A stretch of DNA of 48,347 nucleotides from Macrostomum lignano. Its lineage: Eukaryota. The notes beneath the pieces were generated by a model. That model was not told the DNA's origin. It searched no databases and worked only from the letters and a program-made list of their open reading frames with translations. A program made the position numbers and the translations under genes. Positions 26,696-44,906 of this stretch are shown here, in pieces; positions within the stretch are counted from its first letter, which is position 1; the number at the start of each line of letters is the position of its first letter. The stretch covers positions 1 through 48,347 of the forward strand of contig NIVC01002730.1 in assembly GCA_002269645.1 (NCBI GenBank), in the 5' to 3' direction.

Positions 26696-27284
26696 TCAGC
26701 GCTTCCCAGTGCCGGGCTGCTGCTGTTTGCTAGACGAAGACGAGCCCGGGCGCCTCATCAGGCCAGACAGGGTGGACCGAAGGCCGCCGCCGGAGCCGCC
26801 AGAGCTGGCAGATTTGGTTTTAACGCCAGCAGCAGTGGATGAGGCCGTTGACGAGACCGAGCTGCCAATAGAGACGCTTGACGAGGCGGTGGCGGAATCG
26901 GCCGAGCTGGTAGGCCGGGGCAGCCGGCTCTGCACCCGGGGCGGCGGGGCCGGGGCCGCCGGTCTCTGATGCTGCGGAGGCGGCGGCGGCGGCGGCGGCG
27001 GCTGCTGAGTTTTGATGTCGTGCCGGGCCTTCAATGGCTGCTGGCCGGCCGGCTTACTGCGGGAATTGTTCTGGCCGGCCGCGGTCACAGATGAGGAGGC
27101 CGAGACGGCCAGTTCGATGCCGAAAGAGTGCGAGTTGAGCAGCTCGAGGGAGGTGGACAGATCGGCAAACAGCTCGCAGTGGACGGTCTGGGCGCTGCGC
27201 AGGAAGGCGCCCGGTTTGTAGTAGCGCTTCAGAATGGACTCGCTGCTGGCGGCGTGGTGGAACCAGGCGCTGAGCTGCTTGGAG
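26696..27284 (-). CDS. RUN-domain (RUSC1/2-like) gene, exon with the RUN C-terminal part and a Pro/Ser-rich tail
   Basis: gtgcag acceptor; continues (N)SKQLSAWFHHAASSESILKRYYKPGAFL...DLSTSLELLNSHSFGIEL, matching RUN motifs; TGA at 26696-26698. Confidence 0.8.
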
Positions 27285-27379
27285 CTGCACGGCGGGGCGG
27301 GGCGAGTGGCTTAGCAAGCTGCTGGGAATCTTATTACTGAAGATCTAACTGCTTTGGAACTGAAGCAGAAAGAAGGCAG

Positions 27380-27962
<583 letters not shown>

Positions 27963-27998
27963 ACCCACTAATACAGAACAAATTCCCCCAGAGCTCAC

Positions 27999-28528
27999 TT
28001 GAGGCAGGCGGCTACAAAGGCGTTGAACTTCAGCCGCTCCGTAGACAGTCCGCCTACCGAGCGGACCTGCCGCAGCACCTCGTTGAGCCGTCGGCTGGCG
28101 GGCTGTCCGCTCGGCTTGCAAGTCTCCTCAATCAGCTGCCACAGCTGGGATCTGCTGCGACCAAAGGACAGCCGGCTGCCCGGGCCGCTGCCGCCGCTGC
28201 CGCCAGAAGACAGCAGCTCGTCGGTCAGCAGGCCGTGCAGCGGCGGGCAGAGGCTCTGCGACAGCACGCTGGACAGCCGCTGCTGGTTGGAGGCGTCGGC
28301 CGTGCCGGCAGCCAGCGGGGAGGCGGTGGCAGCCAGGATCAGGTCGTTGACGCCGCGGATAGCGTCGGACACGAGCTGGCTGAGGCGGTCCAGCCGAGAC
28401 TGCCGCTGCTGCTGGCTGGCGGCGGCGGTGGACTCCGCAGTGCGCCTGGGCGAGCCGACTGGAGAGCCGCAGAACACCAGCGGCGGACTGTCGTTGTCGC
28501 CGTAGAGGCCAACCTGCTGCGGGATGAC
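27999..28528 (-). CDS. RUN-domain (RUSC1/2-like) gene, exon with the RUN core
   Basis: cggcag acceptor, gtgagc donor; LCPPLHGLLTDEL...LWQLIEE...LKFNAFVAACL resembles RUSC LCPALHALVADGL...FHAFILGLLN; phase 2 joins the next exon. Confidence 0.85.
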
Positions 28529-28639
28529 CTGCCGGGCCAACAGCGGATATTTAATTTGTATATACTACTTAGTTACTTAGGGGCTACAAAATTTATTGTA
28601 ATATATAATAATTGATTACACCTGCTCTAAGCAGATGTA

Positions 28640-28900
28640 CAATCGACAGCTCAGCCGCAGCTATTGCGAGCGCATCTGAAGGCTGCGTACGGCTGTTCAG
28701 TCCAAGGACTGGGGGGAGGGTCAACACACACCCTCAATTACCCCAGCTAATGCTGGAACCCATTTTACAGCTGGGTGAACTGAAACAATTCAGAGTTGAG
28801 CGTCTTACTCAAGAACACAAATTGTTCCGAGTGGGGTCGAGAATCGAACCCCCGACCTTCCAGTCGCGATTCCGACGTTCTAACCACTAGGCTACTACAC
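28640..28900 (-). mobile_element. tRNA-derived SINE with a CORE-like central domain
   Basis: A box TAGCCTAGTGG (28884-28894), B box GGTTCGATTCT (28840-28850), then TGTGTTCTTGAGTAAGACGCTCAACTC...CAGTTCACCCAGCTGTAAAATGGG. Confidence 0.75.
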
Positions 28901-29043
28901 TAAATGGTTAGGGGCTACCATCGCCCCTTAAACATAGCCTGCTGCGATAGGATGGGAGTTTTAAAGTCCCAAAGTCCAAAGCTTCTGGTTGTTGCCGATA
29001 TGTAGCGTAAATGACTTAATACTAGCGCAATACATTTGCTTAC

Positions 29044-29669
29044 CTGTACATCGTAGTTCAATTGCAAACTGAGCGGCCGGCGCAGCAGAGTCTGCTGACG
29101 GTGCGGCGAGTCGCCAGACGGCAGGACGGCGGCGGCGGCGCCTAAATCCACCGTGGACCCGACGCCGCCGCGCCAGATCTGACCGGCAGCAGCCGAGCCT
29201 GCAGTCGGGCTGGCAGCGGCCTGGCCTTTCGGACTATGGAACTGGATCCGGTCGCAGAAGGACACCGACTTCTTGGCGCGGAAGCCGCCGCCGCCGCCGC
29301 CGTCGTCGCTGTCGTCGGGTAGTCGCGCCTTGCCGACGAGGAAGCCGCCTGCGGCGTGGTTGAACGATGAGGCGTCGCGGCAGCCGCCGCTGAGGACTCC
29401 TCCTCCTGCGAGTCTGTCAGGCTCTGCGTCATATCGTAGCCGACGCCGCTTCCAGATGCGCCGGCGCCGCTGCCGCTGTTGGCTGCGGTGCCACCAGCAG
29501 CGGTGGCGGAGCTGACGGAGCAGAGCCGGTGCGGCTCGCTGAGCGTCCGTTTGGCGCCGCTGCCGCCGAGGCCGCCGCGCTGCTTCCTGGACGAGTCGGT
29601 GGCGCGGGCAACGCGACGACGAGCGGCGCGTCGAAGACGCTCGGCCGATTTGGATTCGGCCGCTTCCGC
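29044..29669 (-). CDS. RUN gene internal exon carrying an apparent 1-nt deletion near 29393
   Basis: ctcccag acceptor, gtaagc donor; both ends phase 0 but length is 626 nt; codon-biased frame changes near GAGGAGTCCTC/AGCGGC. Confidence 0.7.
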
Positions 29670-29711
29670 CTGGGAGACGGCAAGTGATGGAATAGAATTA
29701 GAACTCGCGTT

Positions 29712-30143
29712 TCCCATATACACAAAATATCCCATATACACAAAATATCCCATATACACAACATATCCCATATACACAAAATATCCCATATACACAAAAT
29801 ATCCCATATACACAACATATCCCATATGCACAAAATATCCCATACACACAAAAATATCCCATACACACAAAATATCCCATATACACAAAATATCACATAT
29901 GCACAAAATATCCCATATACACAAAATATCACATATGCACAAAATATCCCATATACACAACATATTCCATATACACAACAGACGTATTTGTGTATCCCAT
30001 ATACACAAAATATCCCATATGCACAAAATATCCCATATACACAAAATGTCCCATATACACAAAATATCCCATATACACAAAATGTCCCATTTACACAAAA
30101 TATCCCATACAAACAACGCAAACAATATGGAAATCTCCCATAT
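29712..30143. repeat. Intronic minisatellite, 18-bp ATATCCCATATACACAAA
   Basis: tandem units between the donor at 30157 and the acceptor at 29670. Confidence 0.95.
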
Positions 30144-30157
30144 TCTAAATTACTTAC

Positions 30158-31000
30158 CTCATCAGCGGCGGCCGCGGCAGCAGCAGCCGCAGAGGCGGCT
30201 GTTGTATCCAAGGACTGCGATCGCTTCTGCTTGCCACCGGCAAGTCGCCGAGCCAGCTGCTGCTGATGCTGCGGATGGCCGCAGTTTCGACACACAAAAT
30301 TCGACGCCGCCGAAGCCGAGACGCTGCCGTCACCGACTGCCGTCCCGATGCCGGAGTCGCCGGCAGCGTCGGCCGTTGTTGTCGCCGACGAAGCTGAGGC
30401 GGCGGCGGCGGCAGCAACGACAGACGACGGATCTCCAAGCGGCAGGGAATCGCGCAGGAAAGCCAGACTGGGCAGCTGCTGCTGCTGCTGAGCGGCGATG
30501 TACCGCCTGCCGTGCTGAAGATCCGAGTGGCTGCGGCCGACTCCGACGGGCCGGCCGGCTGTTCGTCGAGCTGCCGACCCCGCCGCCGCCGCAGACGCCG
30601 GGAACTGCTGCTGCTGGTCGACCAGCTCTCGGGCTCGGCGACGAAATTCGCGAAATCCCGGGCCGCCACCGTGTAGGAAGCGGAGAGTGGACTCGGGCTG
30701 CGGCTGCTGCTGCTGCTGGGGCGCTGGCTCAGGCGGCGCACCCGATGGCGAAGCGGATGCAGGCGTGTTGGTGGCTCGTTTGAATAGCTCCAGCAGGGTG
30801 CCTGAGTACCTGTTCTGCTGCTGCTGCTGGCGCACCTGCTGCTGCTGCTGGCGCACCTGCTGCTGCTGTTCGGGTGTCAATTGCTGCTGAAGCCGTTGCT
30901 GCTGTTGTTGCTGCTGCTGTTGTTGGGGTTGCTGCTGCTGCTTGCGCCAGGCAACAGCGTTCTGCTGAGCTGTGCTGGAGGACATCTCGTGACGGGACTT
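30158..31000 (-). CDS. RUN gene internal exon, poly-Q/poly-A rich (281 aa)
   Basis: tttatag acceptor, gtaagt donor, phase 0/0, open frame KSRHEMSSSTAQQ...AAADE. Confidence 0.8.
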
Positions 31001-31047
31001 CTATAAATTGGCAAATGTCAAGACAGTAAAATAATCCACTGTTAAAA

Positions 31048-31680
31048 AATATCCCATCCTCACAAATATCCTATTCTCAGAAATATCCCATCCTCACAAA
31101 TACATGTATCCCATTTTCAGAAATATCCACCCTTAGAAATATCCCACCCTCAGAAATATCCCATCCTCATAAATACACCACCCTCATAAATATCCCATCC
31201 TCACAAATATCCCATCTTCGTAAATATCCTTTTTTCATAAATATCCCATCCTCACAAATATCCCATCTTCGTAAATATCCTATTTCCATAAATATCCCAT
31301 CTTCATAAATATCCCATCTTTATAAATCTTCCATCCTCATAAATATCCCATCCTCACAAATATCTTATCCTCACGAATATCCCATCTTCGTAAATATCCC
31401 ATCTTTTAAATCTTCCATCCTCATAAATATCCCATCCTCACGAATATCCCATCTTCGTAAATATCCTATTTTCCATAAATATCCCATCTTCATAAATATC
31501 CTATTTCCATAAATATCCCATCTTCATAAATATCCCATCTTTATAAATCTTCCATCCTCATAAATATCCCATCCTCACAAATATCCTATCCTCACGAATA
31601 TCCCATCTTCGTAAATATCCTATTTTCATAAATATCCTATTTTCACAAATATCCATTCTTTATAAATTTTCCATCCTCAT
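31048..31680. repeat. Intronic minisatellite, about 18-bp AAATATCCCATCCTCAT/CAC
   Basis: degenerate tandem units. Confidence 0.92.
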
Positions 31681-31784
31681 AATTAGCCAATCGTTAATAT
31701 TTTATTTCCATTACTATATAATAAACAAAGACATCCTGAAACCATAAATAAATATCTAATTCTGACAAGCATCCCCAATCGCAC

Positions 31785-32647
31785 CTGATCGCTATCCAGC
31801 GGCCTAGCATCGCGCACAATTCTATTCAACTCTTTCCAAGACACCAGATGGCCGCCGCCGGCAGATTTCAATTGGCGCCAGGCGCTGTCGCCGCCGCTGC
31901 CAGCAGATCCGGCGCTAGTAGGCGGCGGCGGCGCCCCGGGGGCGTTGTTGTTGCCATTGGCAACGCCGGGGGAAGCGGCGGCGGAGACGTCTTTAATAGA
32001 CGAAGTTCGAACCGCGGACCAAGTAGTCATGGGAGGCCTGCCGGAGCCAGCGGAGGTGGCGGCAGCGGCCGGTAGCCGACTGTCATCAGCGGTGGCATCG
32101 TCGCTGGCCTCCAAATCGCTGGTACTGACGAATCGCTTGTTAGACTTGGCCAGCGCCATCCAGGTGTTCATATTGCTGCCGGCCGATGCGCCGCTCATAG
32201 CAACGGAAGCGTCCATGCCAACCACTACTTGATAGTTAGGACTGGCGCTTTTCCCCAATATCTGTTTAACATTAGCTGACGATTGACTAACACTAGTTGT
32301 CATGCCAGCTACACTGTTGCCTAGCAACAGAGAGCCAGCGCCGGCTCCCCCGACGCCGGCGTCCGTTCTCGCGGAGTCCTCCGGTTCGAATAGCGGGTTG
32401 CCAACTCCGGCCTCTTCGGCGTCTGCGGCAGCAGCAGCCGCTGCGGCTAAACACGAATCGCTGCGCGACATCTGCTCGGATAGAGACGAATTGGCCAGAC
32501 AGGCGGCGGCTGCTGCGGCTGCGGCCGACGAGAACTGGCTGGTGGCCCGGACGGGGTCCAGATGGGCCAGCTCCAGCTGGGCGAACAGGTCCAAGTTGGA
32601 CACGGCCGAGTCCAGGCCGGAGTGGACGGCGCGCCCTCCTGAGTGGT
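31785..32647 (-). CDS. RUN gene internal exon, Ala/Ser/Gly rich
   Basis: catcgcag acceptor (phase 1), gtgcga donor after DSDQ (phase 0), open frame with GC-rich codon bias. Confidence 0.78.
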
Positions 32648-32689
32648 CTGCGATGAAGAGAAATCGAAGAGATGTTCGTTCTCAAACTC

Positions 32690-34420
32690 ATTTCCTGAGT
32701 TTACCCGAATCTCGTTCTCCAATTTCCCTGTATCTCATTCTCTAAATTCCCTGAATCTCATTCTCTAAATTCCCTGTATCTCATTCTCTAAATTCCCTGA
32801 ATCTCATTCTCTAAATTCCCTGAATCTCATTCTCTAAATTCCCTGAATCTCATTCTCTAAATTCCCTGAATCTCATTCTCTAAATTCCCTGAATCTCATT
32901 CTCTAAATTCCCTGAATCTCATTCTCTAAACAATCTCATTCTGAATATCATTCCTTAATCCTTAACTTTCCTGAATCTCAATCCTTGTTTGAATCTCAAT
33001 CCTTGTTTGAATCTCAATCCTTTTCTGAATCTTTTCTGAATCTCAATCAGTTTCTGAATCTCAATCCGTTTCTGAATCTCGATCCTTTTCTGAATCTCAA
33101 TCCGTTTCTGAATCTCAATCCGTTTCTGAATCTCAATCCGTTTCTGAATCTCAATCCTTTTCTGAATCTCAATCCTTTCCTGAATCTTATTCCTTAATCT
33201 CACTGAATCTCATTCCTTAATATCCCTGAATCTCATTCCTTTATTACCCTGAATCTCATTCTCTAAATTCCCTGAATCTCATTCCTCAATCTCCCTGAAT
33301 GTCATTCTCTAAATTCCCTGAATCTCATTCCTTAATCTCCCTGAATCTCATTCTCTAAACTTCCCGAATCTCATTCTCTAATCTCCCTGAATCTCATTCT
33401 CTAAACTTCCCGAATCTCATTCTCTAATCTCCCTGAATCTCATTCTCTAAACTCCCTGAATCACATTCCTTAATCCTTAACTTTCCTGAATCTCAATCTT
33501 TGTTTGAATCTCAATCCTTATCTGAATCTCAATCCTTTCCTGAATCTTATTTCTTAATCTCCCCGAATCTCATTCCTTAACTTTCCTGAATCTCATTCCT
33601 TCATTTCCCCGAATCTTATTTCTTCATTTCCCTGAATCTCATTCCTTAATCCTTAACTTTCCTGAATCTCATTCCTTCATTTCCCTGAATCTCATTCCTT
33701 AATTCTCAACTTTCCTGAATCTCAATCCTTAACTTTCCTGAGTCTCATTTCTTCATTTCCCTCAATCTCATTCCTTCATTTCCCTGAATCTCATTCCTTC
33801 ATTTCTCTTAATCTCATTCCATCATTTCCCTTAATCTCATTCCTTCATTTCCCTGAATCTCATTTCTTCATTTCCCTCAATCTCATTCCTTCATTTCCCT
33901 GAATCTCATTCCTTCATTTCCCTTAATCTCATTCCTTCATTTCCCTGAATCTCATTTCTTCATTTCCCTGAATCTCATTCCTTCATTTCCCTGAATCTCA
34001 TTCCTTCATTTCTCTTAATCTCATTCCATCATTTCCCTGAATCTCATTCCTTCATTTCTCTTAATCTCATTCCTCATTTCCCTGAATCTCATTCGTTCAT
34101 TCCCTTAATCTCATTCCTCATTTCCCTTAATCTCATTCGTTCATCTCCCTTAATCTCATTCCATCATTTCCCCGAATCTCATTCTTTTCCCTGAATCTCA
34201 TTCCTTTCCCCGAATCTCATTCCTTTTTTCCTGAATCTCAATCCTTAACTTTCCTGAATCTCAATCCTTCATTTCCCCGAATCTCATTCCTTTTTCCTGA
34301 ATCTCAATCCTTAACTTTCCTGAATCTTATTCCTTTATTTCCCTGAATCTCATTCCTTAATGCTTAACTTTCCTGAATCTCATTCCCTGACTTCCCTGCA
34401 ATCCCATATCTCATTCCCTG
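32690..34420. repeat. Intronic minisatellite family around CTGAATCTCATTCC (18-22 bp sub-arrays)
   Basis: several drifting tandem variants. Confidence 0.92.
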
Positions 34421-34428
34421 CTACTCAC

Positions 34429-34567
34429 AGGACAAAGGCTCGAACGGCTGCAGGAAGTCTTCATCATAAGCCAGATCCTGGGCCGTAGATTCGGCCATCT
34501 CGTGCGGATAACTAACAGAGCGAGGCAGGGCTCCGCTGCTCACCGCCGGGTAGGCGCTCTCGCACAG
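34429..34567 (-). CDS. Most 5' recognisable exon of the RUN gene (LCESAYP...PRSVSYPHEMAESTAQDL...); start codon may be ATG at 34498
   Basis: ttgtgcag acceptor, gtgagt donor, phase 1 joins exon 32647; no further upstream exon found. Confidence 0.6.
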
Positions 34568-34919
34568 CTGCACAAGCGTGGGAGATAAGCGCTTTATATC
34601 ATTTGGTTTCGCATAATTAATTCAAGTTAAACAAATTAGACTAACTAGATCGGTTAAATGAAATTGCAATGAAAATTTAAGCACAGCTCTTTTAGAGATT
34701 TTAAATAATATCATTAAGCATGACTAATTAAAGTTAAATCAGTCAAATAATCGCTGAGTTCAATTCACAAAACGTTATTTATAAAGTGTGGTTAAACACT
34801 CACTTCGTAAACTGATAACTTACTTTGAAAGCTTTAAGGTAACTTAAATTTACTAATTAAATCAGGACAGACTCTAAAATAAAGATAATACCAAAACAAG
34901 TCAATGCAATCGTATAGTT

Positions 34920-34975
34920 CAGGGGTCGGCAAACTCCGGCCCGAAAAGCCTATCTATCTAGCCCTTGGTCTCTGA
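34920..34975 (+). mobile_element. Possible hAT-type terminal fragment
   Basis: CAGGGGTCGGCAAACTCCGGCCC resembles Charlie/MER58-like hAT termini; no partner TIR seen. Confidence 0.35.
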
Positions 34976-35019
34976 AACTTTACAATAGCAATCCGGTCCG
35001 CTCAAGGCTTGTGTCTTCA

Positions 35020-35720
35020 GCTCTTTCTCTCTTCTCTCCTCTCTCCACTCTTCTCTACCTCTCCTCTCTCCCCTCTTCTCTACCTCTCCTCTCTCCCCTC
35101 TTCTCTACCTCTCCTCTCTCCCCTCTTCTCTACCTCTCCTCTCTCCACTCTTCTCTACCTCTCCTCTCTCCACTCTTCTCTACCTCTCCTCTACCTCTCC
35201 TCTCTCCCCTCTTCTCTACCTCTCCTCTCTCCCTCTTCTCTACCTCTCCTCTCTCCACTCTTCTCTACCTCTCCCTCTCCCCTCTCTCCACTCTTCTCTA
35301 CCTCTCCCTCTCTCTCTCCACTCTTCTCTACCTCTCCTCTCTCCACTCTTCTCTACCTCTCCTCTCTCCACTCTTCTCTACCTCTCCTCTTCTCTACCTC
35401 TCCTCTCTCCACTCTTCTCTACCTCTCCTCTCTCCACTCTTCTCTACCTCTCGTCTCTCCACTACCTCTCGTCTCTCCACTCTTCTCTACCTTTCCTCTC
35501 TCCCCTCTTCTCTACCTCTCCTCTCTCCACTCTTCTCTACCTCTCCTCTCTCCACTCTTCTCTACCTCTCCTGTCTCCACTCTTCTCTACCTCTCGTCTC
35601 TCCACTCTTCTCTCCCTCTTCTCTACCTTTTTTCTCCTCCTTCTCTACCTCTCCTCTCTCCTCTCTCTCGTCTTATCTTATCTTATCTCTTCTCTCATCC
35701 CATCTCTCGCCTCGCCTTGC
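35020..35720. repeat. Polypyrimidine minisatellite (CTCTCCACTCTTCTCTACCTCTC-type, about 24 bp)
   Basis: tandem units. Confidence 0.92.
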
Positions 35721-35760
35721 CTCTCCTTTCTCACTCTATTCCCTTTTTTCCACTCCCAGC

Positions 35761-38700
35761 TGGTCCAAGGTATAGAGATAAACAAACAATAGAAAATTTA
35801 TTCAATAAACAATGACCTGCACTAAATCTATGATTCGAATGGCAACATTTGCCAATAGCAACTCACCCGTCCAATCAGCAGCATATTTTTATCCATTGTG
35901 CATTGATTTTGTTAGAAAGACAGCCAGTAGCTACTCAACCATTGCAACTCATGAAAAAATTAACAAGTCAAAAATTAACTGTAATTTGTTTATTTTGTAA
36001 TTGTTTTATTTTGTATGAGTCAATTAAAGAATTCTTTACTAAAAATTAGGCCAAAAAACTAATAATTGTAGTTATCATATTAGTATACGGAATTTATTGT
36101 TATTATCCCCTACTGATTTCATCTTACCAAGAGTCTTATCAACCAGTTTGTATTAGAGTAATATACTTCCTTAGTCACAGTTTAAAAAACTAAATGATTT
36201 GGTTGCCTTAGTTCTAAATCACTAAATATAATTAGAAATATATAAGATCTAAGCTAAGATTCATTCTGCTTGTAGCACCTGCCTTTATCATATATAATAT
36301 ATTGTGCCTCTTCCCCTAAAGTATGGGGTATTAAGTGTTAGGGTCTAGCCTACAATGTTATGAAATGAGTGCTAGAAGGATCAAAGTTATTTTTAGACTT
36401 TTATGGGTTTATGGATATTTGAGCCAACTTAAAAATAAGAATACATACAAATATGCAAATATATAAAAGTTAGGCTTAACATAATTATACTCAGTTTCTT
36501 TTTTACTTATTGAGTAATTACTTAATAAGTTTTTATATAGTTATAACTTGAACATTTCTTATTTAAGTATTTTTAACATGTTTACCTGCTTCTTTTTAAT
36601 GCCTAAAATAGAAGTTAGAATCAAATGCACTAAATAATAAAATAACCTAGTTTATTTAATGTTTTATAACAATTTACTTTAGCCAATTAAAGTAGCTTTC
36701 ATTTTGTTAAACCAATATATTTGTTCTTTAATTTTAGTCTTTAGCTTAATTGAAATTTAGTAAGCTTTACACAAAGACCATTCAAAGCAATGTATAAAGA
36801 ATGTTCAGTAAAAAAAGTAATAAAGTCTTTATGATTATAGTTTAATAATAAAAATATAAATGCAATAATCCAAATATATACAAAAACATATAAATTAGCT
36901 TTTATTTGTATTTTTACCTATGGGCTTATTAGGACTTCTTAATATACATTCATGCTTTATAAGTATATCAATCATAAAAATAAAAAATATTTACATTTTC
37001 ATAGTTTGGAATAGTCAGTAAGTACCCTGGAAAAAATGATTACATTTTTAATGTATACCAATATATGCCAAATATAGGCCCCTATTATCTTATACAAAGC
37101 TTCAAATCATCAATTTTGTAATAGTACTAATGATTTTGATATTTCATTTCAATTAAAAAAGTTCAAAACAATAAACAATAAACACTGTTGGACACCTGTC
37201 TATTAATAAGCATCAATCCATTATTAAGTGTTAATTTTAAGTATTTCAAGCATTAAGATTTCTTATTAATGTTAATAGACTACCATTAAGATTTTTTTGC
37301 ACTAAGGGATTAATGAATTTGCAATAATAATTTTGTGAGTTAATGACACATTCATTGTTAACATTAATGACAGTGTCAATGACCAAAGATACAAAGAACA
37401 AGAATATATGTCTGATAAGTGAAAACATTACAAATTAACAGATTAATACTTATTAATAATTATCAGTTAACTTTCAATTAACTTAACAAAATTAAGAGTT
37501 AATAAGTTAAGATTCTTTTGTTTTTACATTAAATGCTTTTGCCATTAATGGAAAATAAGATTTTCATTAATAGTTCCCAACACTGACAATAATTATATTT
37601 GTATACAGTTTTGATAATCTTCTCGAATCCTTCACTAAACTATTTTTTCAATGTTTTTTTATATTTTTTCCACTTGAAAAGCTGATTTTAGCATGTTTGG
37701 ATATCTTCTAAGCTATTAAAACAGTAAAATTAAGAACTTTGTTTTTTGCAATTTTCTAATTCTAGCAATACTTAATGATTCCTAGCAATTCATAGTTTTG
37801 AAGTTTCTTATTTTAGATTGGTACAAAAGTGCAAGAAACAATAAAACAATTTATCAGAAACAATGAAACAATAAGTGTCAAGACTCTTGTCAAAACTCAA
37901 ATAATGGGCAATCCAATATATTATGTGGCCAAAAACATTGATGGGATAATGTGCTAATTCTTAAGAAGTCAATAGGTTGCTAGCCATTTGCTGGGTGTCC
38001 CATGTCAGCCTAGCCAACTTTGCCACCATTGACATGTTTCTTTCCTTAGTCAGCTTGATAGTAATATGTAGCGAGTTTGGATTTACAGTAAATGATAGTT
38101 CTGCAAGGTAGCCTACTAGCATGGTGATGATCAACTTAATGGTTAATAGTCTTAATAAGAACCTAGTAGCAAGAACATAAGTCTAAATGTATTTCTCCTC
38201 TCTCTAACTCATCCCTTTGGGCTTTGGACCATAGACACTCCCAAGCATTAATGCTATATTAGACAATGTGATTGCCACATTTTTGCACTAATCTAAAAGC
38301 ACAAAAACTTTAAAACTTCTAATTGTTTAAGAATTATTAGGAATTGTAAAAATGAAAAGTGCTAAAAACAAAGTTATTAATTTTACATTGAAAAAATAGT
38401 TCAATGTTCAATTTGAAAAGAATGCAATAGTTTTATATAAAATATAAACAATATAAAACAAAAACAAAATTTGAGCATTTTTGTTAAAATTTCTAATCCT
38501 TAGGCAATATAATTCTTTTTTATTTAAAATTTGATATATAAAGTTTAGAGATTTGTCTTAGGCTAGTTTTTAAGTAAGTCATAATAAAACTAACTTGTAT
38601 TTTCATTTAAAAATAACTCACTTTTTCATGTTTTCTATATTTTGAGCATAAAATTTATTTATAGGGGGCCTATCAATATACAAATTACAATTATTATAAA

Positions 38701-39160
38701 CTAAAGGTTAAAATAATTATAAATATTTCAATTGCCACTATGCAAAGCTAAATTAAAAAATAATAATAAACACATTTTAAACAATAACTATATAGTCTAG
38801 ATTTAGGGTGGCACCCTGCCATTAAGTTTCATTTTTTTTATTTTTGTTATATAAATAAATTAATCAAAAGCAAAACACATTAAGCCAAGTAATCTATGCA
38901 CTAGTATACCCCATTAAAACATTTCTGGATCTACCTACAACACAACTATGCTTGATTGTGGTTTGTAAACTATCTAGTACAGGAAGCTTTTAGCTATGCC
39001 TCACTCACTCACATCACACTGACTGGTTTGCTGATAGTGATACTCTATTCTGGTCTTTCAAGCCAAGGTCAAGAAGTAGAAAGGTACATTTTTGAAGTCA
39101 CTGATTAAATATGCAGGCCTAGGCTAGGTCTATACATCTATTGAAACTTAAAATTCCCTT
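35761..39160. other. AT-rich, CpG-depleted non-coding block, possibly a decayed transposon
   Basis: only 5 CpG counted in 3.4 kb; no long ORF; abrupt return of CpG at 39162. Confidence 0.6.
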
Positions 39161-39553
39161 TCGCCGAAAATTCCTTCGCCGAAATGGGCTGCACTCATTC
39201 TAATATGCACAGCAAATAAATAAATGCATAGCATAGTTAGTATGTATATTTAGTATATTTAGAAATGCCTTCTCAATGACAGTAAATGACAGTCTCAATC
39301 TCAACGCCTCGAATTCGTCTTAGCATAGCATCTTAGCATTTGTGGTGATTTTATCCATAGGCCTGCCTACCTACTTGTTTCGAGGCAATAGTTTTTATTT
39401 CCAACTTTGATGTGAAAGTTAAATTGTTAAACAAACGAACAGACGGTTAAAACAAAACCACATACAAAGCTGATGCTTTTATTAACTTCATATTTCTTTC
39501 ATGTTTAAAACTGCGCGTACTAAATATATGTTTGTAAATATCATCAACAAATA

Positions 39554-39909
39554 AGGGGGGGCCGTAGCCCAGCGGTAGCGCAGCTGCTCTGGTGTGCCAG
39601 CGACCCAGGCTCGATTCCAAGTGCAGTCACATTATTTTGGGGCTGAATTGGAATCTCGGCTTGGCTCTGCTCGTGCAATTAACGGCCTTGAGAGCCAACC
39701 CCCCAAGGCGCAGTGAAGTGTACATGCCTAACGATAATATAAAGTTAGGGCCGCTTTACACTCCTGTGTGAGTGTGTGCCTGCGTACGTATCCGCGCGCT
39801 TGTATGCCTGCTCAGCTTGTATGCCGCAGTAATGCCTCTCGCCGGTTGTGTGCCTATGTCGCTTAAAGTGCGCCAGGGTGCACACAACCCCCTGCCTCTA
39901 ATAAAAAAA
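39554..39909 (+). mobile_element. Full-length tRNA-derived SINE with A-rich tail and 14-bp target-site duplication
   Basis: A box TAGCCCAGCGG (39565-39575), B box GGCTCGATTCC (39608-39618), AATAAAAAAAA tail, TSD ATCATCAACAAATA at 39540-39553 and 39910-39923. Confidence 0.88.
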
Positions 39910-40295
39910 ATCATCAACAAATAGCCACAATATATGAAGAGATCAAAGTATGCAAGCCCTTTCTTAGATATATTTGTCTTTGCCAGGAAGACCACGGAAC
40001 ACTGTATGAACAGTATTAAGAAAAGCTTTATGAGTCAAAACTAATGGTAACCAGTTCAGATAACCATGCAGATCCAAGCGATGTCTAAGAAGACGGAAAG
40101 TTTTTACTTTCACACCGATACATGTATGTAAAATATACATTCATGTAGTAGTTTCATTGTGTTTGCAACGTAAAATGATGAAAATGAGCTAGTCAGTAAC
40201 TGCGCATAAGAATAAAAAATGAAACTATCAATAGCGTTATGGGCTGGCTCATTTGCTTACCATCTAGAGCCACTCATCGATTATCATTTCACAAA

Positions 40296-40408
40296 TCAAT
40301 TGTCTTTCTGGACCTTATTTTTGGACTGATCGCGACTTTCATACCACAATGAGATTTGTACGCTGCAGTAGGATAGGGTTAATGTCAAAAAAAGATGCCA
40401 CCAGGGTC
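40296..40408 (-). CDS. HHAT: HHAT-like copy 2 last coding exon (RPWWHLFLTLTLSYCSVQISLWYESRDQSKNKVQKDN*)
   Basis: attgcag acceptor; homologous to 5219-5334. Confidence 0.85.
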
Positions 40409-40518
40409 CTGCAATGTGTTTATTAAGTTTATAGTTTCGATTAGGTAGGCTATTTTCATCTGTAAAGAAAGGCTTATTGCAATATACATGCACATGGATG
40501 TACGAAATGTAGCCTTAC

Positions 40519-40675
40519 TATAAAAAAGAAGCGGTTTGAAGATTTCAACAACGAGCCACAAAGCGTCCAGAGTATTCATGAGAAAAACAAAGATGAAACA
40601 AGACGTGAGGATCAGATTGCAGCCAATAATGTACGCAACCAAGCGCTGGTGGTTTTTTGGACTCAGGATCAGGCT
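40519..40675 (-). CDS. HHAT: HHAT-like copy 2 penultimate exon
   Basis: tttcag acceptor, gtaagg donor, 157 nt, SLILSPKNHQRLVAYIIGCN... Confidence 0.85.
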
Positions 40676-40811
40676 CTGAAATATTTAAAGGTACGAGTGT
40701 TTCCCTAATCATTACAGAATTAAGCATGCTCTCACAATGGACTTAAGTCCAGTCCTGAACTAGCCCAGAATCAAATCATTTCGAGTTCATTCTGTATCAT
40801 CATTATGGGGT

Positions 40812-40945
40812 CAATCACTCGGAGCTCACTCTGGGTCAGTCACTCGGAGCTCACTCTGGGTCACTCACTCGGAGCTCACTCTGGGTCAGTCACTCGGAGC
40901 TCACTCTAGATCAGTCACTCGGAGCTCACTCTGGGTCAGTCACTC
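40812..40945 (-). repeat. Short stub (about 5 units) of the 25-bp minisatellite found at 2822-4205
   Basis: reverse-complement units CACTCGGAGCTCACTCTGGGTCAGT. Confidence 0.92.
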
Positions 40946-40961
40946 TGATCCCCAGACTCAC

Positions 40962-41972
40962 CAGCCACGTCTTCAACTTCCTCTCATAGAAAGCGCAGGC
41001 CAGGGTCTCCAGAAGCAGCTGCAGGGCGTTCAGCGCAGCCCAGATGCGGACGCTGGTTGAGTCGCCGTGGTAGATGGAGACAAAGGCGAAGCTGGCAGCC
41101 ACAGCAGCTACCTGTCTCACAATGCCGTGCCGACTGCCTCCCATGGGGATGTAGATGTGGCTGTACATGAAGGAGGCCAGCCCCCTGTCGAACACGCGCC
41201 ACATCTGCCTGTAAGTATAGACCCGGCTGATGCAGTCGGGCCAGTGCGGCAGCTCGACTCCGTCAATGCTGGACACGAGACCCGGCCAGCCGTACAGCTG
41301 CACGTAGACCAGCATGAAGTTCTGGCCATGCAGGTACATTGAGAACACGAGCCGCTTGTAGGGCACGGACTCGTAAGACCGAATGCTCTCCAGAAACGCT
41401 CCAACAGGTAGGAAATGATGCAGCACCTGAAGCAGCAGCATCCACACCAACAGGCGAGTCGCTCGCCACGCCAGCAGTAGCAGCAGGTTCGGCTTCCACA
41501 CCAGCCTGTCGGGTCTCTCAGCCTCCCGACAGAAGTCAGCAAAGGTGAGGATCGGGCCGGAAAAGTGCCAGGGCAGGTAAAATCCGTAAGCCAGAGCTCG
41601 GGGAAGGTGCAGTCTAAGGAACTGGAGCAGGCTCAGCTGCTGTGCCTCATCTGCAGGTTGGCGTCTCTGGTCCCGCAGCATTTGGTTGAGGCTGAGTCCA
41701 GCGGAGATGCAGCGGCAGTACAGGTAGCCAGAGATTGGGTAGAACAGGTGAGAGTAATCACCTTCGAGATCCAGGACTTGAAAGAGCGCGCTGCTGTAAT
41801 CCGAGTTTTGCAGCATCATTGCCGACAGAATGAACAGCCAGACACCAAACTGGGAGAAATATCCCATGCAAACAGCACCGCAGTGCAACACCAGAAAGTA
41901 CATCGTTGCTTTGTAACCAAGAATAGCCGTTGTCACAGCCAAGGTGAAACTCGTAGTAGCCAGGTAGTGCAC
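40962..41972 (-). CDS. HHAT: HHAT-like copy 2, large MBOAT-domain exon (337 aa)
   Basis: catcag acceptor, gtgagt donor; about 98% identical to 1797-2807. Confidence 0.92.
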
Positions 41973-42031
41973 CTGATGAGGAATAGGGAACTTGGCAGGT
42001 TCTCAGCTGCTCTTGCAGGATATGGCATTTC

Positions 42032-42160
42032 GATTGAGCACTCTGTCACTGTCACTCCTCTCCTGACTGATCACTCTGTCTCTGTCACTGCTCTCCTGAC
42101 TGATCACTCTGTCACTGTCACTCCTATCCTAACTGATCACTCTGTTACGGTCTCTCCTAT
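42032..42160 (-). repeat. Short stub (4-5 units) of the 28-bp minisatellite found at 444-1730
   Basis: reverse-complement units CTGACTGATCACTCTGTCACTGTCACTC. Confidence 0.9.
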
Positions 42161-42205
42161 CTTGTCATTAGAAATCGATTCCGCCATCATTAAATATTGA
42201 CTTAC

Positions 42206-42319
42206 CCATCTCGGAGCCAAACGAATCGTGACCTGACTGACCAACAAGAAGCCGACGCTAGCAAAGATTAAGAATTTGTAGCCGTCTTTCAGATCCGATT
42301 CCAACGAAAAGGAGCGCTC
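42206..42319 (-). CDS. HHAT: HHAT-like copy 2 exon (ERSFSLESDLKDGYKFLIFASVGFLLVSQVTIRLAPRW)
   Basis: tccgcag acceptor, gtaagt donor, phase 0/0. Confidence 0.8.
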
Positions 42320-42528
42320 CTGCGGATTAAGATTGGGCCACCGGCGAGGCTGAACGAGCTAATAACATTTTATTGCCTGCGGTGTATCTATGCGAGACAA
42401 AGACTACATCTAAGCAACTCCTTTAAACACATTGAACTTGTAGTTTTTTCAGAGATAGTTACCATGCAGAGACTACAACACTAAAGATCAAGTTAAGAAA
42501 TTAATCCATTCTCTCGGATCCTTCTTAC

Positions 42529-42575
42529 CATCCACTTGGATAGCCAGCCATTCGTTAGCGTCATAGGGTGCAACT
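42529..42575 (-). CDS. HHAT: HHAT-like copy 2 47-nt exon (xLHPMTLTNGWLSKWM)
   Basis: ttgcag acceptor, gtaaga donor; homologous to 149-195. Confidence 0.75.
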
Positions 42576-42764
42576 CTGCAAGCGAATGCGAAACAATTAA
42601 AGAATTATACTGTTCTATAATGATAGCGTACGAGCTAGATAGAAAGGTTTTACGAGCGACATATGATTGATAGAGTTCTGATAAGGAATAACGAAGTACA
42701 CTGTTACTAATAGAAGTAATAGAAGTACACTACTATTGGCAAGCAGTCCGGCCCACTTCGCTGA

Positions 42765-42840
42765 TCCCTGAGCACTCACACGGATACGTGCGCAGGCACA
42801 CGCTCATACAGGGTGTACAGCAGCACAGACTTTCTCTTGG
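42765..42840 (-). mobile_element. Fragment of SINE body related to 39554-39909
   Basis: TACACCCTGTATGAGCGTGTGCCTGCGCACGTATCCG matches 39757-39800. Confidence 0.55.
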
Positions 42841-42938
42841 ACGGAAGTCACACGACAAGATTCTCGAACGATATTTATACCTGGCCAACATGTACCTATA
42901 CACCTGATTGCCACCAGAGTGAATTTATCATATCGAAC

Positions 42939-43167
42939 CTTTCTTTGGCGACCTGCCAATGTTTAGATAGAAGTCGCCAGCCGCGTAGCCGAATGCGGCA
43001 GCGAACACGGAGGCGTACAGCAGGGTTTCCCGAGGCCCAGCGCTGGGGGGAACGGAAGTTGACACCGAGGCGGCGGCTGAGCGTTTGATCGGTTCGGCTT
43101 CCTTGCCTTGAAGGTCTCCGCTTGTCTGCACCGAGTTTGCAGTTGACGAAGTGGAAGCCATCGTCAT
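42939..43167 (-). CDS. HHAT: HHAT-like copy 2 probable first coding exon (MTMAST...GPRETLLYASVFAAAFGYAAGDFYLNIGRSPKK)
   Basis: ATG at 43167; PRETLLY...Y...FY aligns with the HHAT N-terminal helix PRWELALY...FYSFYEVY; donor gttcga is weak and chosen for phase. Confidence 0.62.
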
Positions 43168-43814
43168 GGATGTTCGATCTTATCTGGTAGGACAAGGCTG
43201 AACGTTCTTTTAAGCTAAGCTTTTCTTCTCTGACTTAAGTAAAACATGCTGTTTGTTTTGCAGCCTTGCAGGGGTTGAACAGAGCACTGTAGATTTTGAA
43301 AAGTACAAGTTCGACCATAGACATTCATGCGAGTGTACCGCATTGGTGAAGAAGGAATAAAATGGACGTGTAATATGGAGATGGAAAACAAAAGCTGCCA
43401 CTTCAATAAGATAAGATAAGATAATAATATTGATATAATTAGATAGTCGTTTAACGGAGAAGATTTTAATGAAAAATTAAAAATCAGTTTCATGAAGAAA
43501 ATTTGATGTCTGCAAAGATTGTAGTCATTTTTGTGATATGTCAGAGATAAAGTTTGGGGGGGGGGGTTGCGTACGCACATTCAAGCTATCATGATTTATC
43601 CACATAAACTGACAATTAATCGTATCATTTCCATTCTTCTCTGTGTAATTTGCGTTTGGTGTGGCCCCCAATTGGGCCGTTTTACTTTGTGCTTGTTGTG
43701 TGCGTATTTAGAACGGTTCGTACAGTATAATAGGTTCACGATCGATAATTTAGGCCTCTAAATTATACTTCTCTAAACTAAAGGCCTCTAAACTAAACTA
43801 AACTTCGTGCGTGG

Positions 43815-44275
43815 CGCAAGAGAAGAGAAGAGTAAAAAGAGAAGAGAGGAGAGATGATAGAAAAGAGAGTAGACATGAGAGAGGGGAGATTAGAGATGAC
43901 AGGTGGAAGAGAAGAGAGGAGTGAGGCGGGAATGAAGAGGGAGAGAGAAGAGAAGAAGAAAGAGAATAGAGTAGAGTAGAGGGAAGAAACGAGAGAGCAG
44001 GAGAGAGGTGAGGAGATGGGAGAGAGGAGGGATAAAAGAGTACAGATCGAGGAAATAGAGGAGAAAGAGGAGAGAGGAGAGAATATAGACGAAAGAGAAG
44101 AGAGAAGAAATAGAAGAGAGAGAGGGGAGAGAGACGAGAGATGAAAGATCAGAGAGATGAGAGAGGTAAGAGAGTAGAGAGAGGAGAAAGTAGTGAGGAG
44201 AAAGAATAGGATAAAGATGAGAGCGCAGAGAGGAGAGATGAGAGATGAGAGACTAGAGATGAGAGAGCAGACAGG
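43815..44275. repeat. Degenerate GA-rich low-complexity tract
   Basis: purine-rich simple sequence. Confidence 0.8.
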
Positions 44276-44681
44276 AGAGGCTGGGTCTGGAGTCTGGATA
44301 ATGGCAGCAGTCAGTTTCTGCAAACAGGGAAAGCAAGATATGGTGTTTGAAAGGTTTTGTAGAGGATTTGGAGACGATTTGGAAGATGAGATTCAAGACA
44401 TGGGATTTCCGCTGATGGATTACAGGGAATGGAATTCTGGCGATGGGATTGCTTCCCCTTTCTCCTCCGGAGGAGGAATTCCACTCGTTTAGTAATAGCG
44501 TCAGCGGCCTGCAGCTAAAGAGGGCTGCAAAGTCAAAGGACAATTCAATGCAGCACAGCGCTTCAAACGATTATATTAATTGCAGTTTGCTTCAAATTTG
44601 CTCAACACAGCAGTTCAAACTCTAAAAAATATGCAATACACAGACCGAAACACAACTATCCAGATGATGTCTGTTGCTTTG

Positions 44682-44790
44682 GGCAGAGCAGCTCCTCGGC
44701 GGTAAACGCGTCCGACTCTCAAACCACGATCCCGGGTTCGATTCCCGGCAGCCACATTCATTTAGGGCTTGTGCACGAATATTGGCCAGG
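44682..44790 (+). mobile_element. tRNA-like SINE head, related to 39554-39909
   Basis: T-arm CCGGG-TTCGATT-CCCGG with B box at 44735-44745; downstream GCAGCCACATTCATTTAGGGCT matches GCAGTCACATTATTTTGGGGCT of the full SINE. Confidence 0.6.
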
Positions 44791-44906
44791 TGGGCTTCGA
44801 TCCCTTCTTGTTCTCTTTTCTTGAATATTGTCGCTGTTTTCCTTGGAGGTCTGTTGTCAAATTAACAAACCAAATCCATTCACCCCATCACAACCTGCAC
44901 ACGCAG

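What the first reader, a model, noticed from the sequence alone, without database searches (positions are those of the whole stretch)
35761..39160. 3.4-kb island almost stripped of CpG with a sharp edge
I count 5 CpG (35836, 35868, 36088, 37624, 38072); at roughly 25-30% GC several dozen are expected. GpC is common. CpG returns at once at 39162, and other AT-rich parts (24950-25640, 39162-39540) have plenty. Traces fit decay: CACAACTATGCTTGATTGTG (38941-38960) reads as a CG-rich hairpin after CpG to CpA/TpG change, and CTAG is frequent where CCGG would be. This points to targeted methylation-deamination or a RIP-like process on one element, or to foreign DNA, in a genome that otherwise keeps CpG.
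Basis: partly seen in the sequence, partly recalled or inferred. Interest (0 to 1): 0.7.

Follow-up and report, generated by a model that had tools for sequence, protein, structure and literature searches.

The report
Sharp-edged CpG-erased mutational island in flatworm
A 3.4-kb AT-rich stretch just upstream of a gene in the flatworm Macrostomum lignano has lost almost all its CpG because cytosines inside it, and only inside it, keep mutating to thymine, which most likely marks a small, sharply bounded patch of DNA methylation in a genome that otherwise shows no sign of it.

Summary
Region 35761-39160 has 5 CpG against 60.5 expected (o/e 0.08), while GpC is 1.57. At matched GC, the last 300 nt inside the right edge hold 0 CpG and the first 300 nt outside hold 10.

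The window is a whole contig of the Macrostomum lignano assembly (NIVC01002730.1). The island lies between an MBOAT gene and a RUN-domain gene and contains the latter's first coding exon. It is non-coding, non-tandem and single-copy in all the sequence I could reach.

It is neither a chimeric join nor a contaminant. The same island with the same flanks occurs on three further contigs, giving three haplotypes 2.6-3.1% apart, each with about 5 CpG.

Polarised substitutions show a regime confined to the island:
- C-to-T changes at CpG hit 4 of 12 bases, against 4 of 857 in the surrounding unique DNA.
- Non-CpG C:G-to-T:A changes are 5.7% against 0.77%.
- A:T-to-G:C changes are unchanged.
- A SINE copy inserted inside the island in one haplotype carries 21 C:G-to-T:A changes out of 22. 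Its neighbour 0.4 kb outside carries 2 changes, neither C:G-to-T:A.

The best reading is local germline 5mC followed by deamination. Classical RIP, foreign origin and an assembly artefact are not supported. Methylation itself was not measured.

The parts
35761..39160 (.). CpG-erased, AT-rich island (GC 26.7%, CpG o/e 0.08), the domain of local C-to-T hypermutation
   Evidence: Searches give the composition and the edge. Searches give the substitution spectrum in three haplotypes. One search shows it is not tandem. Searches find no Pfam or Rfam match.
35868..35896 (-). First coding exon (about 10 codons) of the RUN-domain gene, followed by a GTGAGT-type donor. It contains the only CpG (35868) conserved in all three haplotypes.
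   Evidence: The gene model P0125 on the sister contig starts here. The exact motif was located.
35034..35624 (.). CT-rich 25-nt minisatellite in intron 1 of the RUN gene. It forms the left border of the island.
   Evidence: TRF; exon 2 at 34430-34576.
37590..38450 (.). Old inverted repeat in the island core that folds into a long hairpin. The arms are about 190-270 nt and 74% identical, and the loop is about 400 nt.
   Evidence: arms; z = -6.8 and -5.3; 140 matches, 48 mismatches, 27 of them transitions. It is present in all haplotypes.
38668..38679 (.). Target site (12-nt duplication) where haplotype NIVC01002729 carries an extra 356-360-nt SINE copy inside the island. That copy is C-to-T hypermutated.
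   Evidence: insertion; 21 of 22 lineage-specific changes are C:G-to-T:A; CpG 11 against 21; GC 0.47 against 0.55.
39150..39184 (.). 15-nt CpG-bearing tandem unit exactly at the right edge. There are 2 copies here and in L011, and 3 in L005.
39161..39553 (.). AT-rich right flank (GC 0.34) that keeps its CpG (12 against 11.2 expected) and shows no CpG hypermutability
   Evidence: (region 39161-40295: 1 transition at 76 CpG bases).
39554..39905 (+). Resident tRNA-derived SINE with an A-tail and 14-18-nt target-site duplication, lying 0.4 kb outside the island. It is CpG-rich (21 CpG) and stable among haplotypes.
   Evidence: direct repeats 39536-39553 and 39906-39923; sequence; other copies in L006 and in the window; 98.9% identity between haplotypes.
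40296..43167 (-). MBOAT/HHAT-like gene (556 aa) upstream of the island on the same strand. CpG o/e is 0.75 and there is no CpG hypermutability.
26699..34576 (-). Remaining exons of the RUN-domain gene. CpG o/e is about 1, with 1 transition at 393 CpG bases.

Best explanation
The island is resident Macrostomum lignano DNA: the 3.3 kb upstream of the RUN-domain gene's start codon, plus its first exon. It lives under its own mutational regime.

Inside the island, cytosines are converted to thymine several times faster than in neighbouring unique DNA, and far faster still at CpG. A:T-to-G:C changes run at the normal rate. New CpGs arise by random mutation from the roughly 390 TpG/CpA sites at about the rate they are destroyed, so the island sits at a steady state of about 5 CpG. 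Its G+C content is still drifting down, from 0.27 now towards an inferred equilibrium of about 0.17.

The most likely cause is dense cytosine-5 methylation of this one domain in the germline or stem-cell lineage. CpG would be the main target, with weaker CpA and CpT methylation, followed by spontaneous deamination of 5mC to T. The surrounding genes and spacers would be unmethylated.

Shown here: the regime, its confinement and its CpG preference. Inferred: that 5mC is the cause, and what recruits it. Candidates for recruitment are AT-rich heterochromatin, an old silenced element, or small RNAs from the central hairpin repeat.
For: 1. Resident, not an artefact. The same island with the same flanks lies on contigs NIVC01002729, NIVC01003352 and NIVC01004183. 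The three haplotypes are 2.6-3.1% apart and each has about 5 CpG in the island proper.

2. Polarised spectrum.
- Island: CpG transitions at 4 of 12 bases plus 2 transversions; non-CpG G/C transitions 5.7%; A/T transitions 0.87%.
- Surrounding non-array DNA, 30263-45392: CpG transitions at 4 of 857 bases (0.5%); non-CpG G/C transitions 0.77%; A/T transitions 0.89%.
- Fisher test for CpG transitions, island against background: p = 1.4e-6.

3. CpG turnover. Of 9 CpG sites seen in any haplotype, only the one in the exon/donor is conserved. Site 38128 reads TG, CA and CG in the three haplotypes, which means two independent deaminations of one CpG.

4. Steady state. There were 4 gains, matching about 4 expected from the 390 TpG/CpA sites, against 6 losses among 6 ancestral CpGs. 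G/C-to-A/T changes run at 0.079 per G/C site and A/T-to-G/C at 0.016 per A/T site, giving an equilibrium GC of about 0.17.

5. AT-richness alone does not cause it. The control 24935-25983 (GC 0.33) keeps 24-27 CpG in three haplotypes, with 1 transition at 49 CpG bases.

6. Natural experiment. The SINE copy inserted inside the island in one haplotype has 22 lineage-specific changes, 21 of them C:G-to-T:A. The context order is CpG 0.17 > CpA 0.145 > CpT 0.085 > CpC 0.04. P(21 or more of 22) is 1.6e-7 even under the island's own spectrum. The resident copy 0.4 kb outside has 2 changes.

7. Reviews report that M. lignano retains DNMT1 and DNMT3 and has low-level 5mC whose genomic pattern is undescribed.
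Against: - No 5mC measurement was available, so methylation is inferred from mutation alone.
- The CpG-specific numbers are small: 12 ancestral CpG bases in the island.
- Non-CpG C-to-T is also raised, 3-fold against non-coding flanks and 7-fold against all background. The SINE insert has about 5 times more non-CpG C-to-T than the island's steady-state rate predicts. This needs either non-CpG methylation, survivorship of refractory cytosines in the old island, or changes that arose in the SINE's source copy or during retroposition.
- A switch from 0 to 10 CpG across one coordinate is sharper than spreading chromatin marks usually give.
- A densely methylated region immediately 5' of an expressed gene's first exon is unusual for invertebrates.
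- The primary paper on M. lignano methylation (Wasik et al. 2015) could not be read here.
Confidence: 0.6

Rival explanations
1. Methylation-independent local cytosine deamination. The AT-rich island spends more time single-stranded (an easily unwound region, replication origin, R-loop or transcribed outron/intron), or it is a preferred substrate of an AID/APOBEC-like deaminase. C-to-U events would then accumulate in all contexts.
For: - Non-CpG C:G-to-T:A is raised 3-7-fold in the island.
- The SINE insert shows mostly non-CpG hits, with a 5'-A preference (ApC 0.23 against about 0.08) and a non-significant G-to-A over C-to-T excess (14 against 7, p = 0.11).
- The island contains a long hairpin-forming repeat.
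Against: - It does not explain the near-extinction of CpG alone: o/e is 0.08 while CpA, CpT and CpC are 0.8-1.2.
- It does not explain the 5-6-fold higher rate at CpG than at other cytosines inside the island (4/12 against 47/829).
- The equally non-coding AT-rich control (GC 0.33) shows nothing of the kind.
- There is no significant strand asymmetry in the island (p = 0.08).
Confidence: 0.2
2. A RIP-like, homology-directed process. The island would be a copy of a repeated element that a repeat-sensing machinery mutates C-to-T over exactly the repeated length, which would explain the razor-sharp edge.
For: - The right edge is sharp.
- C-to-T occurs in all contexts, with CpA about as strongly hit as CpG in the SINE insert.
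- Composition is AT-rich with TpA/ApT of 1.03.
Against: - (CpA+TpG)/(ApC+GpT) is 1.25, above the RIP threshold of 1.03, and the TpA/ApT value is matched by the non-mutated control.
- CpA is not depleted (odds ratio 1.17).
- The duplicated SINE copy 0.9 kb away in the same haplotype is unmutated, whereas RIP hits both copies.
- No second copy of the island was found in any fetched locus.
- RIP is known only from fungi (my own knowledge).
Confidence: 0.08
3. Foreign or ancient-origin DNA that arrived already CpG-poor, for example by horizontal transfer from a heavily methylated genome or from a CpG-poor element family, and has simply not re-equilibrated.
For: - Its composition (GC 0.27) is far from the window's (0.48), and no other such segment occurs in about 60 kb of unique M. 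lignano sequence.
- The edge is sharp.
Against: - It is present in three haplotypes with syntenic flanks, so it is older than their 3% divergence.
- CpGs are being destroyed now, at 6 of 6 ancestral sites, so the deficit is actively maintained rather than inherited.
- A CpG-rich SINE that landed in it is being eroded too.
- There was no similarity to phage records and no protein-domain trace.
- A general nucleotide database was not available, so distant foreign similarity was not tested.
Confidence: 0.05
4. Assembly artefact, contamination, chance, or selection against CpG in a regulatory region.
For: The contig comes from a repeat-rich long-read assembly, and the window also carries a suspicious inverted duplication at its left end.
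Against: - There are four independent contigs with identical junctions.
- Poisson p is 1e-9 to 1e-15.
- Divergence in the island (2.6-3.1%) is as high as or higher than in the flanks, so there is no sign of constraint.
Confidence: 0.02

Closest known systems
5-methylcytosine deamination and CpG depletion of methylated DNA (vertebrate bulk genome; methylated compartments of mosaic invertebrate genomes)
   Same: There is a CpG-specific deficit with normal or high GpC. CpG-to-TpG/CpA transitions are many times faster than other changes. The same CpG decayed independently on both strands (TG/CA/CG at 38128). The state is a steady one of a few residual CpGs.
   Different: The scale and sign are reversed. 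This is one 3.4-kb depleted patch in a CpG-replete background, the opposite of a CpG island. The o/e of 0.08 is lower than the typical vertebrate value of about 0.2 (my own knowledge). Non-CpG cytosines are also eroding, and the edge is almost base-sharp.
Invertebrate mosaic (gene-body) methylation, as in Ciona, oyster, honeybee and annelids
   Same: It is an invertebrate with DNMT1 and DNMT3 and a bimodal local CpG o/e.
   Different: Here the gene bodies (MBOAT, RUN, PKA-RII) keep CpG (o/e 0.75-1.2) and show no CpG hypermutability. The depleted segment is the 5'-flanking intergenic DNA.
Transposon-targeted methylation in cnidarians and other invertebrates (Ying et al. 2022, PMC8857917)
   Same: Methylation would be directed at a non-genic or selfish segment rather than at gene bodies, and a SINE that landed in the domain is affected.
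   Different: The island has no recognisable transposon features or copies. The SINE copy just outside the domain is not affected, so targeting is by position and not by element family.
Fungal RIP relics and AT-rich methylated blocks (Neurospora, Leptosphaeria AT-isochores)
   Same: A sharply bounded AT-rich block created by C-to-T mutation, with inserted repeats mutated in it. In Neurospora such AT-rich DNA is itself the signal for heterochromatin and DNA methylation (my own knowledge).
   Different: The RIP dinucleotide indices are not met, CpG rather than CpA is the prime target, a linked duplicate escapes, and the host is an animal.
APOBEC-type editing of retroelements
   Same: The inserted SINE copy differs from its relatives almost only by G-to-A and C-to-T changes.
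   Different: Both strands are hit (14 against 7, not significant). The surrounding non-retroposed island DNA shows the same bias among haplotypes, and CpG is preferred.

Membership tests
5mC-deamination CpG decay (methylated domain) | CpG o/e strongly reduced while GpC is not | tested here: met
   CpG o/e is 0.08 and GpC o/e is 1.57.
5mC-deamination CpG decay (methylated domain) | Polarised substitutions show CpG transitions far above non-CpG C transitions, and above CpG transitions in unmethylated neighbours | tested here: met
   Island: 4/12 at CpG against 47/829 at non-CpG G/C. Background: 4/857 at CpG. p = 1.4e-6. Site 38128 reads TG/CA/CG. The numbers are small.
5mC-deamination CpG decay (methylated domain) | The organism encodes maintenance and de novo DNA methyltransferases | not tested
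   Taken from reviews citing Wasik et al. 2015: DNMT1 and DNMT3 retained, with low-level 5mC. The primary paper was not readable, and the genes were not searched for here.
5mC-deamination CpG decay (methylated domain) | 5mC physically present on the domain in the germline | not testable with these tools
   No methylation data were accessible.
Repeat-induced point mutation (RIP) | Dinucleotide indices: TpA/ApT at least 0.89 and (CpA+TpG)/(ApC+GpT) at most 1.03 | tested here: not met
   The values are 1.03 and 1.25. The unmutated AT-rich control gives 0.97 and 1.19.
Repeat-induced point mutation (RIP) | Acts on duplicated sequence and mutates both copies | tested here: not met
   The SINE copy inside the island has 21 C:G-to-T:A changes. 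The copy 0.9 kb away in the same haplotype is 98.9% identical to its allele. The island itself has no second copy in the fetched loci.
Invertebrate gene-body methylation | CpG depletion lies in transcribed gene bodies, with intergenic DNA spared | tested here: not met
   Gene bodies have o/e 0.75-1.2 and CpG transitions at 3 of 643 bases. The depleted part is 5'-flanking. Caveat: the true transcription start of the RUN gene is unknown, so the island could be a 5' intron or outron.
Horizontally acquired or contaminant DNA | Absent from allelic or homeologous copies, or similar to another taxon | tested here: not met
   It is present with the same junctions in three haplotypes on four contigs. 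There was no phage match. A general nucleotide database was not available.
Transposable element (single insertion) | Terminal repeats or target-site duplication, coding remnants, and other genomic copies | tested here: inconclusive
   There are no terminal repeats at the island ends, no Pfam hit in six frames and no other copy in about 200 kb of fetched loci. The whole genome could not be searched.

The most novel reading that the evidence does not exclude
The island is a position-defined 'mutational sink' in an animal genome: a bounded chromatin domain in which any DNA, including newly inserted retroposons, is rapidly and almost exclusively C-to-T mutated in CpG and non-CpG contexts. It would be a metazoan counterpart of fungal RIP/AT-isochore genome defence, driven by DNMT-type or deaminase enzymes and perhaps nucleated by the central hairpin repeat through small RNAs.
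Probability: 0.15. Interest if true: 0.85.

Novelty: new variant of a known kind. Interest (0 to 1): 0.55.

Why it matters
Free-living flatworms such as M. lignano are reported to keep DNMT1 and DNMT3, but where their sparse methylation sits is undescribed. This locus gives a sequence-only prediction: methylation, or another cytosine-deaminating activity, is concentrated in rare, sharply bounded, AT-rich intergenic patches rather than in gene bodies. It is also strong enough to erase CpG and to degrade a retroposon that lands there.

If similar islands exist genome-wide, they would mark the targets of flatworm DNA methylation. That would give a new example of methylation used away from gene bodies in a spiralian, and show how AT-rich 'holes' can be created and maintained by mutation alone.

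It is also a caution for annotation. Composition outliers of this kind can look like foreign DNA without being foreign.

Tried and rejected
- Synthetic CpG-free construct or vertebrate contaminant: this was my first thought, because of the other zero-CpG stretches. I rejected it. Those stretches are minisatellite arrays, and the window is a Macrostomum lignano contig.
- Degenerate tandem array as the origin of the island: TRF at minimum score finds only trivial repeats.
- Coding or RNA content: no ORF above 66 aa, no Pfam hit in six frames, no Rfam hit at gathering score or at E up to 1, and no tRNA.
- Phage similarity: none.
- Terminal inverted or direct repeats at the island ends: none. Only an internal old inverted repeat was found.
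- RIP indices: negative.
- Strand asymmetry as a sign of transcription-coupled deamination: not significant.
- More copies through exact look-up of short island ORFs: nothing on record.
- A fourth haplotype from contig NIVC01003353: the fetched part ends at about window 26.2 kb, and its first 11 kb, which by extrapolation could reach the island's left part, had no gene to fetch it by.
- The primary methylation paper (Wasik et al. 2015) was not held, and the Macpiwi paper does not mention methylation.
Full report
**1. The observation**

Region 35761-39160 is 3400 nt at 26.7% GC. GpC is 95 (o/e 1.57). With a background o/e of 0.8, the Poisson probability of 5 or fewer is 2e-15.

The right edge is abrupt at matched composition. 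The segment 38861-39160 (GC 0.367) has 0 CpG against 9.9 expected. The segment 39161-39460 (GC 0.360) has 10 against 9.6.

The strand-symmetrised dinucleotide profile of the island is almost the same as that of an AT-rich control, 24950-25983 (GC 0.33). Only CpG differs, 0.08 against 0.90.

The window has other zero-CpG stretches, but all are minisatellite arrays whose unit happens to lack CpG. The island has no tandem periodicity.

- CTAG occurs 15 times against 8.1 expected. That is no more enriched than TGCA or AGCT, and CTAG is not what CpG deamination makes of CCGG.
- The 38941-38960 'hairpin' is a 5-bp stem with no CpG in any haplotype.

**2. Where we are**

The 424-aa ORF at 14726-16000 is a PKA type II regulatory subunit. 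Its best named relatives are Macrostomum lignano proteins. Exact look-up shows that the window is the whole contig NIVC01002730.1 of assembly GCA_002269645.1.

The annotated genes all lie on the minus strand:
- an MBOAT/HHAT-like gene at 40296-43167;
- a RUN-domain gene whose exons run from 34576 down to about 26700;
- the intronless PKA-RII gene.

The fuller RUN model on the sister contig begins with a short first coding exon. In the window this exon is at about 35868-35896, followed by a GTGAGT donor.

So the island is the RUN gene's first exon plus the 3.26 kb upstream of it. It is bounded on the left by a CT-rich minisatellite in intron 1. On the right it is bounded by an AT-rich but CpG-replete 0.4 kb stretch, then a SINE, then the MBOAT 3' end. 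About 60% of the contig is minisatellite.

The island has no ORF above 66 aa. It has no Pfam signal in six frames, no Rfam match, no tRNA and no phage similarity.

**3. Not a join, not a contaminant**

Using the neighbouring genes as handles, I fetched the same region from three more contigs:
- NIVC01002729 (L005);
- NIVC01003352 (L011);
- NIVC01004183 (L009).

All carry MBOAT, the island and the RUN exon in the same order. L009 is 99.75-100% identical to the window, so it is the same haplotype assembled twice. L005 and L011 are two further haplotypes. The three are roughly equidistant, 2.6-3.1% apart in the island and 1.6-3.3% apart in the flanks. Each has about 5 CpG in the island proper. 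The CpG-erased state therefore predates their split, and the junctions are real.

**4. What is happening in it**

I assigned each singleton difference to its lineage by comparing the three haplotypes site by site.

| Class | Island | Surrounding non-array DNA (30263-45392) |
|---|---|---|
| Transitions at ancestral CpG bases | 4 of 12 (plus 2 transversions) | 4 of 857 (0.5%) |
| Transitions at non-CpG G/C | 5.7% | 0.77% |
| Transitions at A/T | 0.87% | 0.89% |

The Fisher test for CpG transitions gives p = 1.4e-6.

Other comparisons point the same way:
- The purely non-coding right flank gives 1 of 76 at CpG and 2.1% at non-CpG G/C.
- An AT-rich non-coding control (24935-25983, three haplotypes) gives 1 of 49 and 2.0%. 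It keeps 24-27 CpG in every haplotype. Low GC by itself therefore does nothing.

Of the 9 CpG sites seen in any haplotype of the island, only the one in the exon/donor (35868) is shared by all three. Site 38128 reads TG, CA and CG in the three haplotypes, the classic footprint of two independent deaminations of one CpG.

CpG gains (4) match what random A/T-to-G/C transitions at the roughly 390 TpG/CpA sites should give. Losses were 6, among 6 ancestral CpGs. The count of about 5 is therefore a mutation-decay steady state. Overall, G/C-to-A/T changes run at 0.079 per G/C site and A/T-to-G/C changes at 0.016 per A/T site. That implies an equilibrium GC of about 0.17, below the present 0.27.

The rates by 3' context are CpG 0.33, CpA 0.065, CpT 0.063 and CpC 0.039. 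A 5' G protects the cytosine in island and flank alike, which fits the GpC excess seen all over the window. Strand asymmetry is not significant.

**5. A natural experiment**

A 352-nt tRNA-derived SINE sits at 39554-39905, 0.4 kb outside the island. It has A/B-box-like head motifs, an A-tail and a 14-18-nt target duplication. It has relatives elsewhere in the genome.

Haplotype L005 carries an extra copy, in inverted orientation, inserted inside the island at 38668-38679 with a 12-nt duplication. Using the unlinked L006 copy as the reference state gives this comparison:

| Copy | Lineage-specific changes | GC | CpG |
|---|---|---|---|
| Inserted, inside the island | 22: 21 C:G-to-T:A, 1 C-to-A, no A/T-to-G/C | 0.47 | 11 |
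| Resident, 0.4 kb outside | 2 | 0.55 | 21 |

The hit rates in the inserted copy are CpG 7/42, CpA 8/55, CpT 4/47 and CpC 2/50. The probability of 21 or more out of 22 is 1.6e-7 even under the island's own spectrum. The resident copy in the same haplotype is 98.9% identical to its allele.

So the effect goes with position, not with the repeat family or with duplication.

There is a caveat. The history of the source copy is unknown. The non-CpG load is about five times what the island's steady-state rate predicts. Part of it may therefore predate insertion, or reflect that the old island retains only refractory cytosines.

**6. Mechanism**

The regime is established by the data above. It is a local C-to-T hypermutation, strongest at CpG, confined to 35.8-39.16 kb, and ongoing since before the haplotype split.

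Its cause is inferred. The CpG preference, the context order CpG > CpA > CpT > CpC, and the reported retention of DNMT1 and DNMT3 with low-level 5mC in this species point to dense cytosine methylation of this one domain in the germline lineage. Deamination of 5mC would follow. I put this at 0.6.

What recruits it is unknown. Three leads are worth noting:
- The AT-rich sequence itself may be self-reinforcing, as in Neurospora (my own knowledge).
- The island may be an old silenced element that is no longer recognisable.
- An 861-nt hairpin-forming inverted repeat lies in the core (37590-38450; z = -6.8 and -5.3; arms 74% identical) and could feed a small-RNA pathway.

The razor-sharp right edge coincides with a CpG-bearing 15-nt tandem unit whose copy number varies between haplotypes (39150-39184). 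That unit may be a barrier or a bound regulatory site. It may equally mark the real transcription start of the RUN gene, in which case the island would be a methylated 5' intron or outron. None of this was testable here.

**7. Rivals**

- Methylation-independent single-strand or enzymatic deamination (0.2). It explains the non-CpG excess but not the selective extinction of CpG.
- A RIP-like homology-directed process (0.08). The indices are 1.03 and 1.25 and the control is similar. The linked duplicate is untouched. No second copy of the island was found.
- Foreign DNA that arrived CpG-poor (0.05). The deficit is being actively maintained, and a CpG-rich insert is being eroded too.
- Artefact, chance or selection (0.02). 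Four contigs agree, the p-values are extreme, and divergence in the island is not reduced.

**8. Comparison and novelty**

The process resembles ordinary methylation-driven CpG decay, but the geometry is inverted. This is a small 'anti-CpG-island' in a CpG-replete, apparently unmethylated neighbourhood, and it lies outside the gene bodies where invertebrate methylation normally sits.

Transposon-directed methylation is known in cnidarians and other invertebrates. Here, however, targeting follows position rather than element family. I rate it a new variant of a known kind, from a single locus, with indirect evidence for the enzyme involved.

**9. Limits**

- There is one locus, 12 ancestral CpG bases and three haplotypes, with no true outgroup.
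- No whole-genome search, no methylation data and no expression data were available.

Noticed in passing
window 1605-2958 and 40811-42164: A 1354-nt inverted duplication (97% identical) carries the large MBOAT exon together with its flanking 33-nt and 25-nt minisatellites. These arrays are hugely expanded in the left copy (449-1734 and 2824-4199). It is either a real partial inverted gene duplicate at the contig end or a long-read assembly artefact.
   Followed up: partly
window 39554-39905; L005 6974-7329; L006 8839-9204; window 45761-45912: A tRNA-derived SINE family with an A-tail and 12-18-nt target-site duplications. It shows an insertion polymorphism between haplotypes: an extra copy sits inside the island on contig NIVC01002729.
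   Followed up: yes
window 37590-38450: An old inverted repeat in the island core folds into a long hairpin (z = -6.8 and -5.3). The arms are 74% identical, with 27 transitions among 48 mismatches. It is present in all haplotypes and could be a foldback or MITE relic, or a source of hairpin RNA.
   Followed up: partly
window 39150-39184: A 15-nt CpG-bearing unit repeated in tandem lies exactly at the right edge of the island. There are 2 copies in two haplotypes and 3 in the third, and its CpGs are conserved.
   Followed up: partly
whole window (for example 449-1734, 2824-4199, 6419-8089, 8402-9973, 12520-14645, 18243-19674, 21097-24934, 32707-34355): About 60% of the contig is minisatellite arrays with unit lengths of 4-49 nt, each with a different unit. 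Array lengths differ between haplotypes. Several arrays lie in introns, and some are read through by long spurious ORFs.
   Followed up: partly
L009 (NIVC01004183.1, 1-19257) against window 30296-48347: A second contig is 99.75-100% identical to the window over more than 6 kb, with 0 substitutions in the aligned island and flanks. The same haplotype appears twice in the assembly.
   Followed up: partly
window-wide; island and flank 39161-40400: GpC is over-represented almost everywhere (o/e 1.1-1.7). Cytosines preceded by G have the lowest C-to-T rate, in the island (0.016) and in the flank (0.006). This looks like a genome-wide context effect independent of the island.
   Followed up: partly
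window 14726-15886 (-): An intronless PKA type II regulatory subunit gene encodes an identical protein on three contigs. An 83%-identical paralogue lies on an unrelated 703-kb contig next to an eIF4E gene.
   Followed up: partly
L008 10001-21836 and 25123-28095: Two MBOAT/HHAT-like paralogues (573 aa and 556 aa, 83% identical over the large exon) lie in tandem on the same strand. The upstream one spreads over 11.8 kb.
   Followed up: no
window 38477-38575 against L005: The haplotype with the extra SINE also lacks about 100 nt of island sequence, about 90 nt from the insertion site.
   Followed up: no
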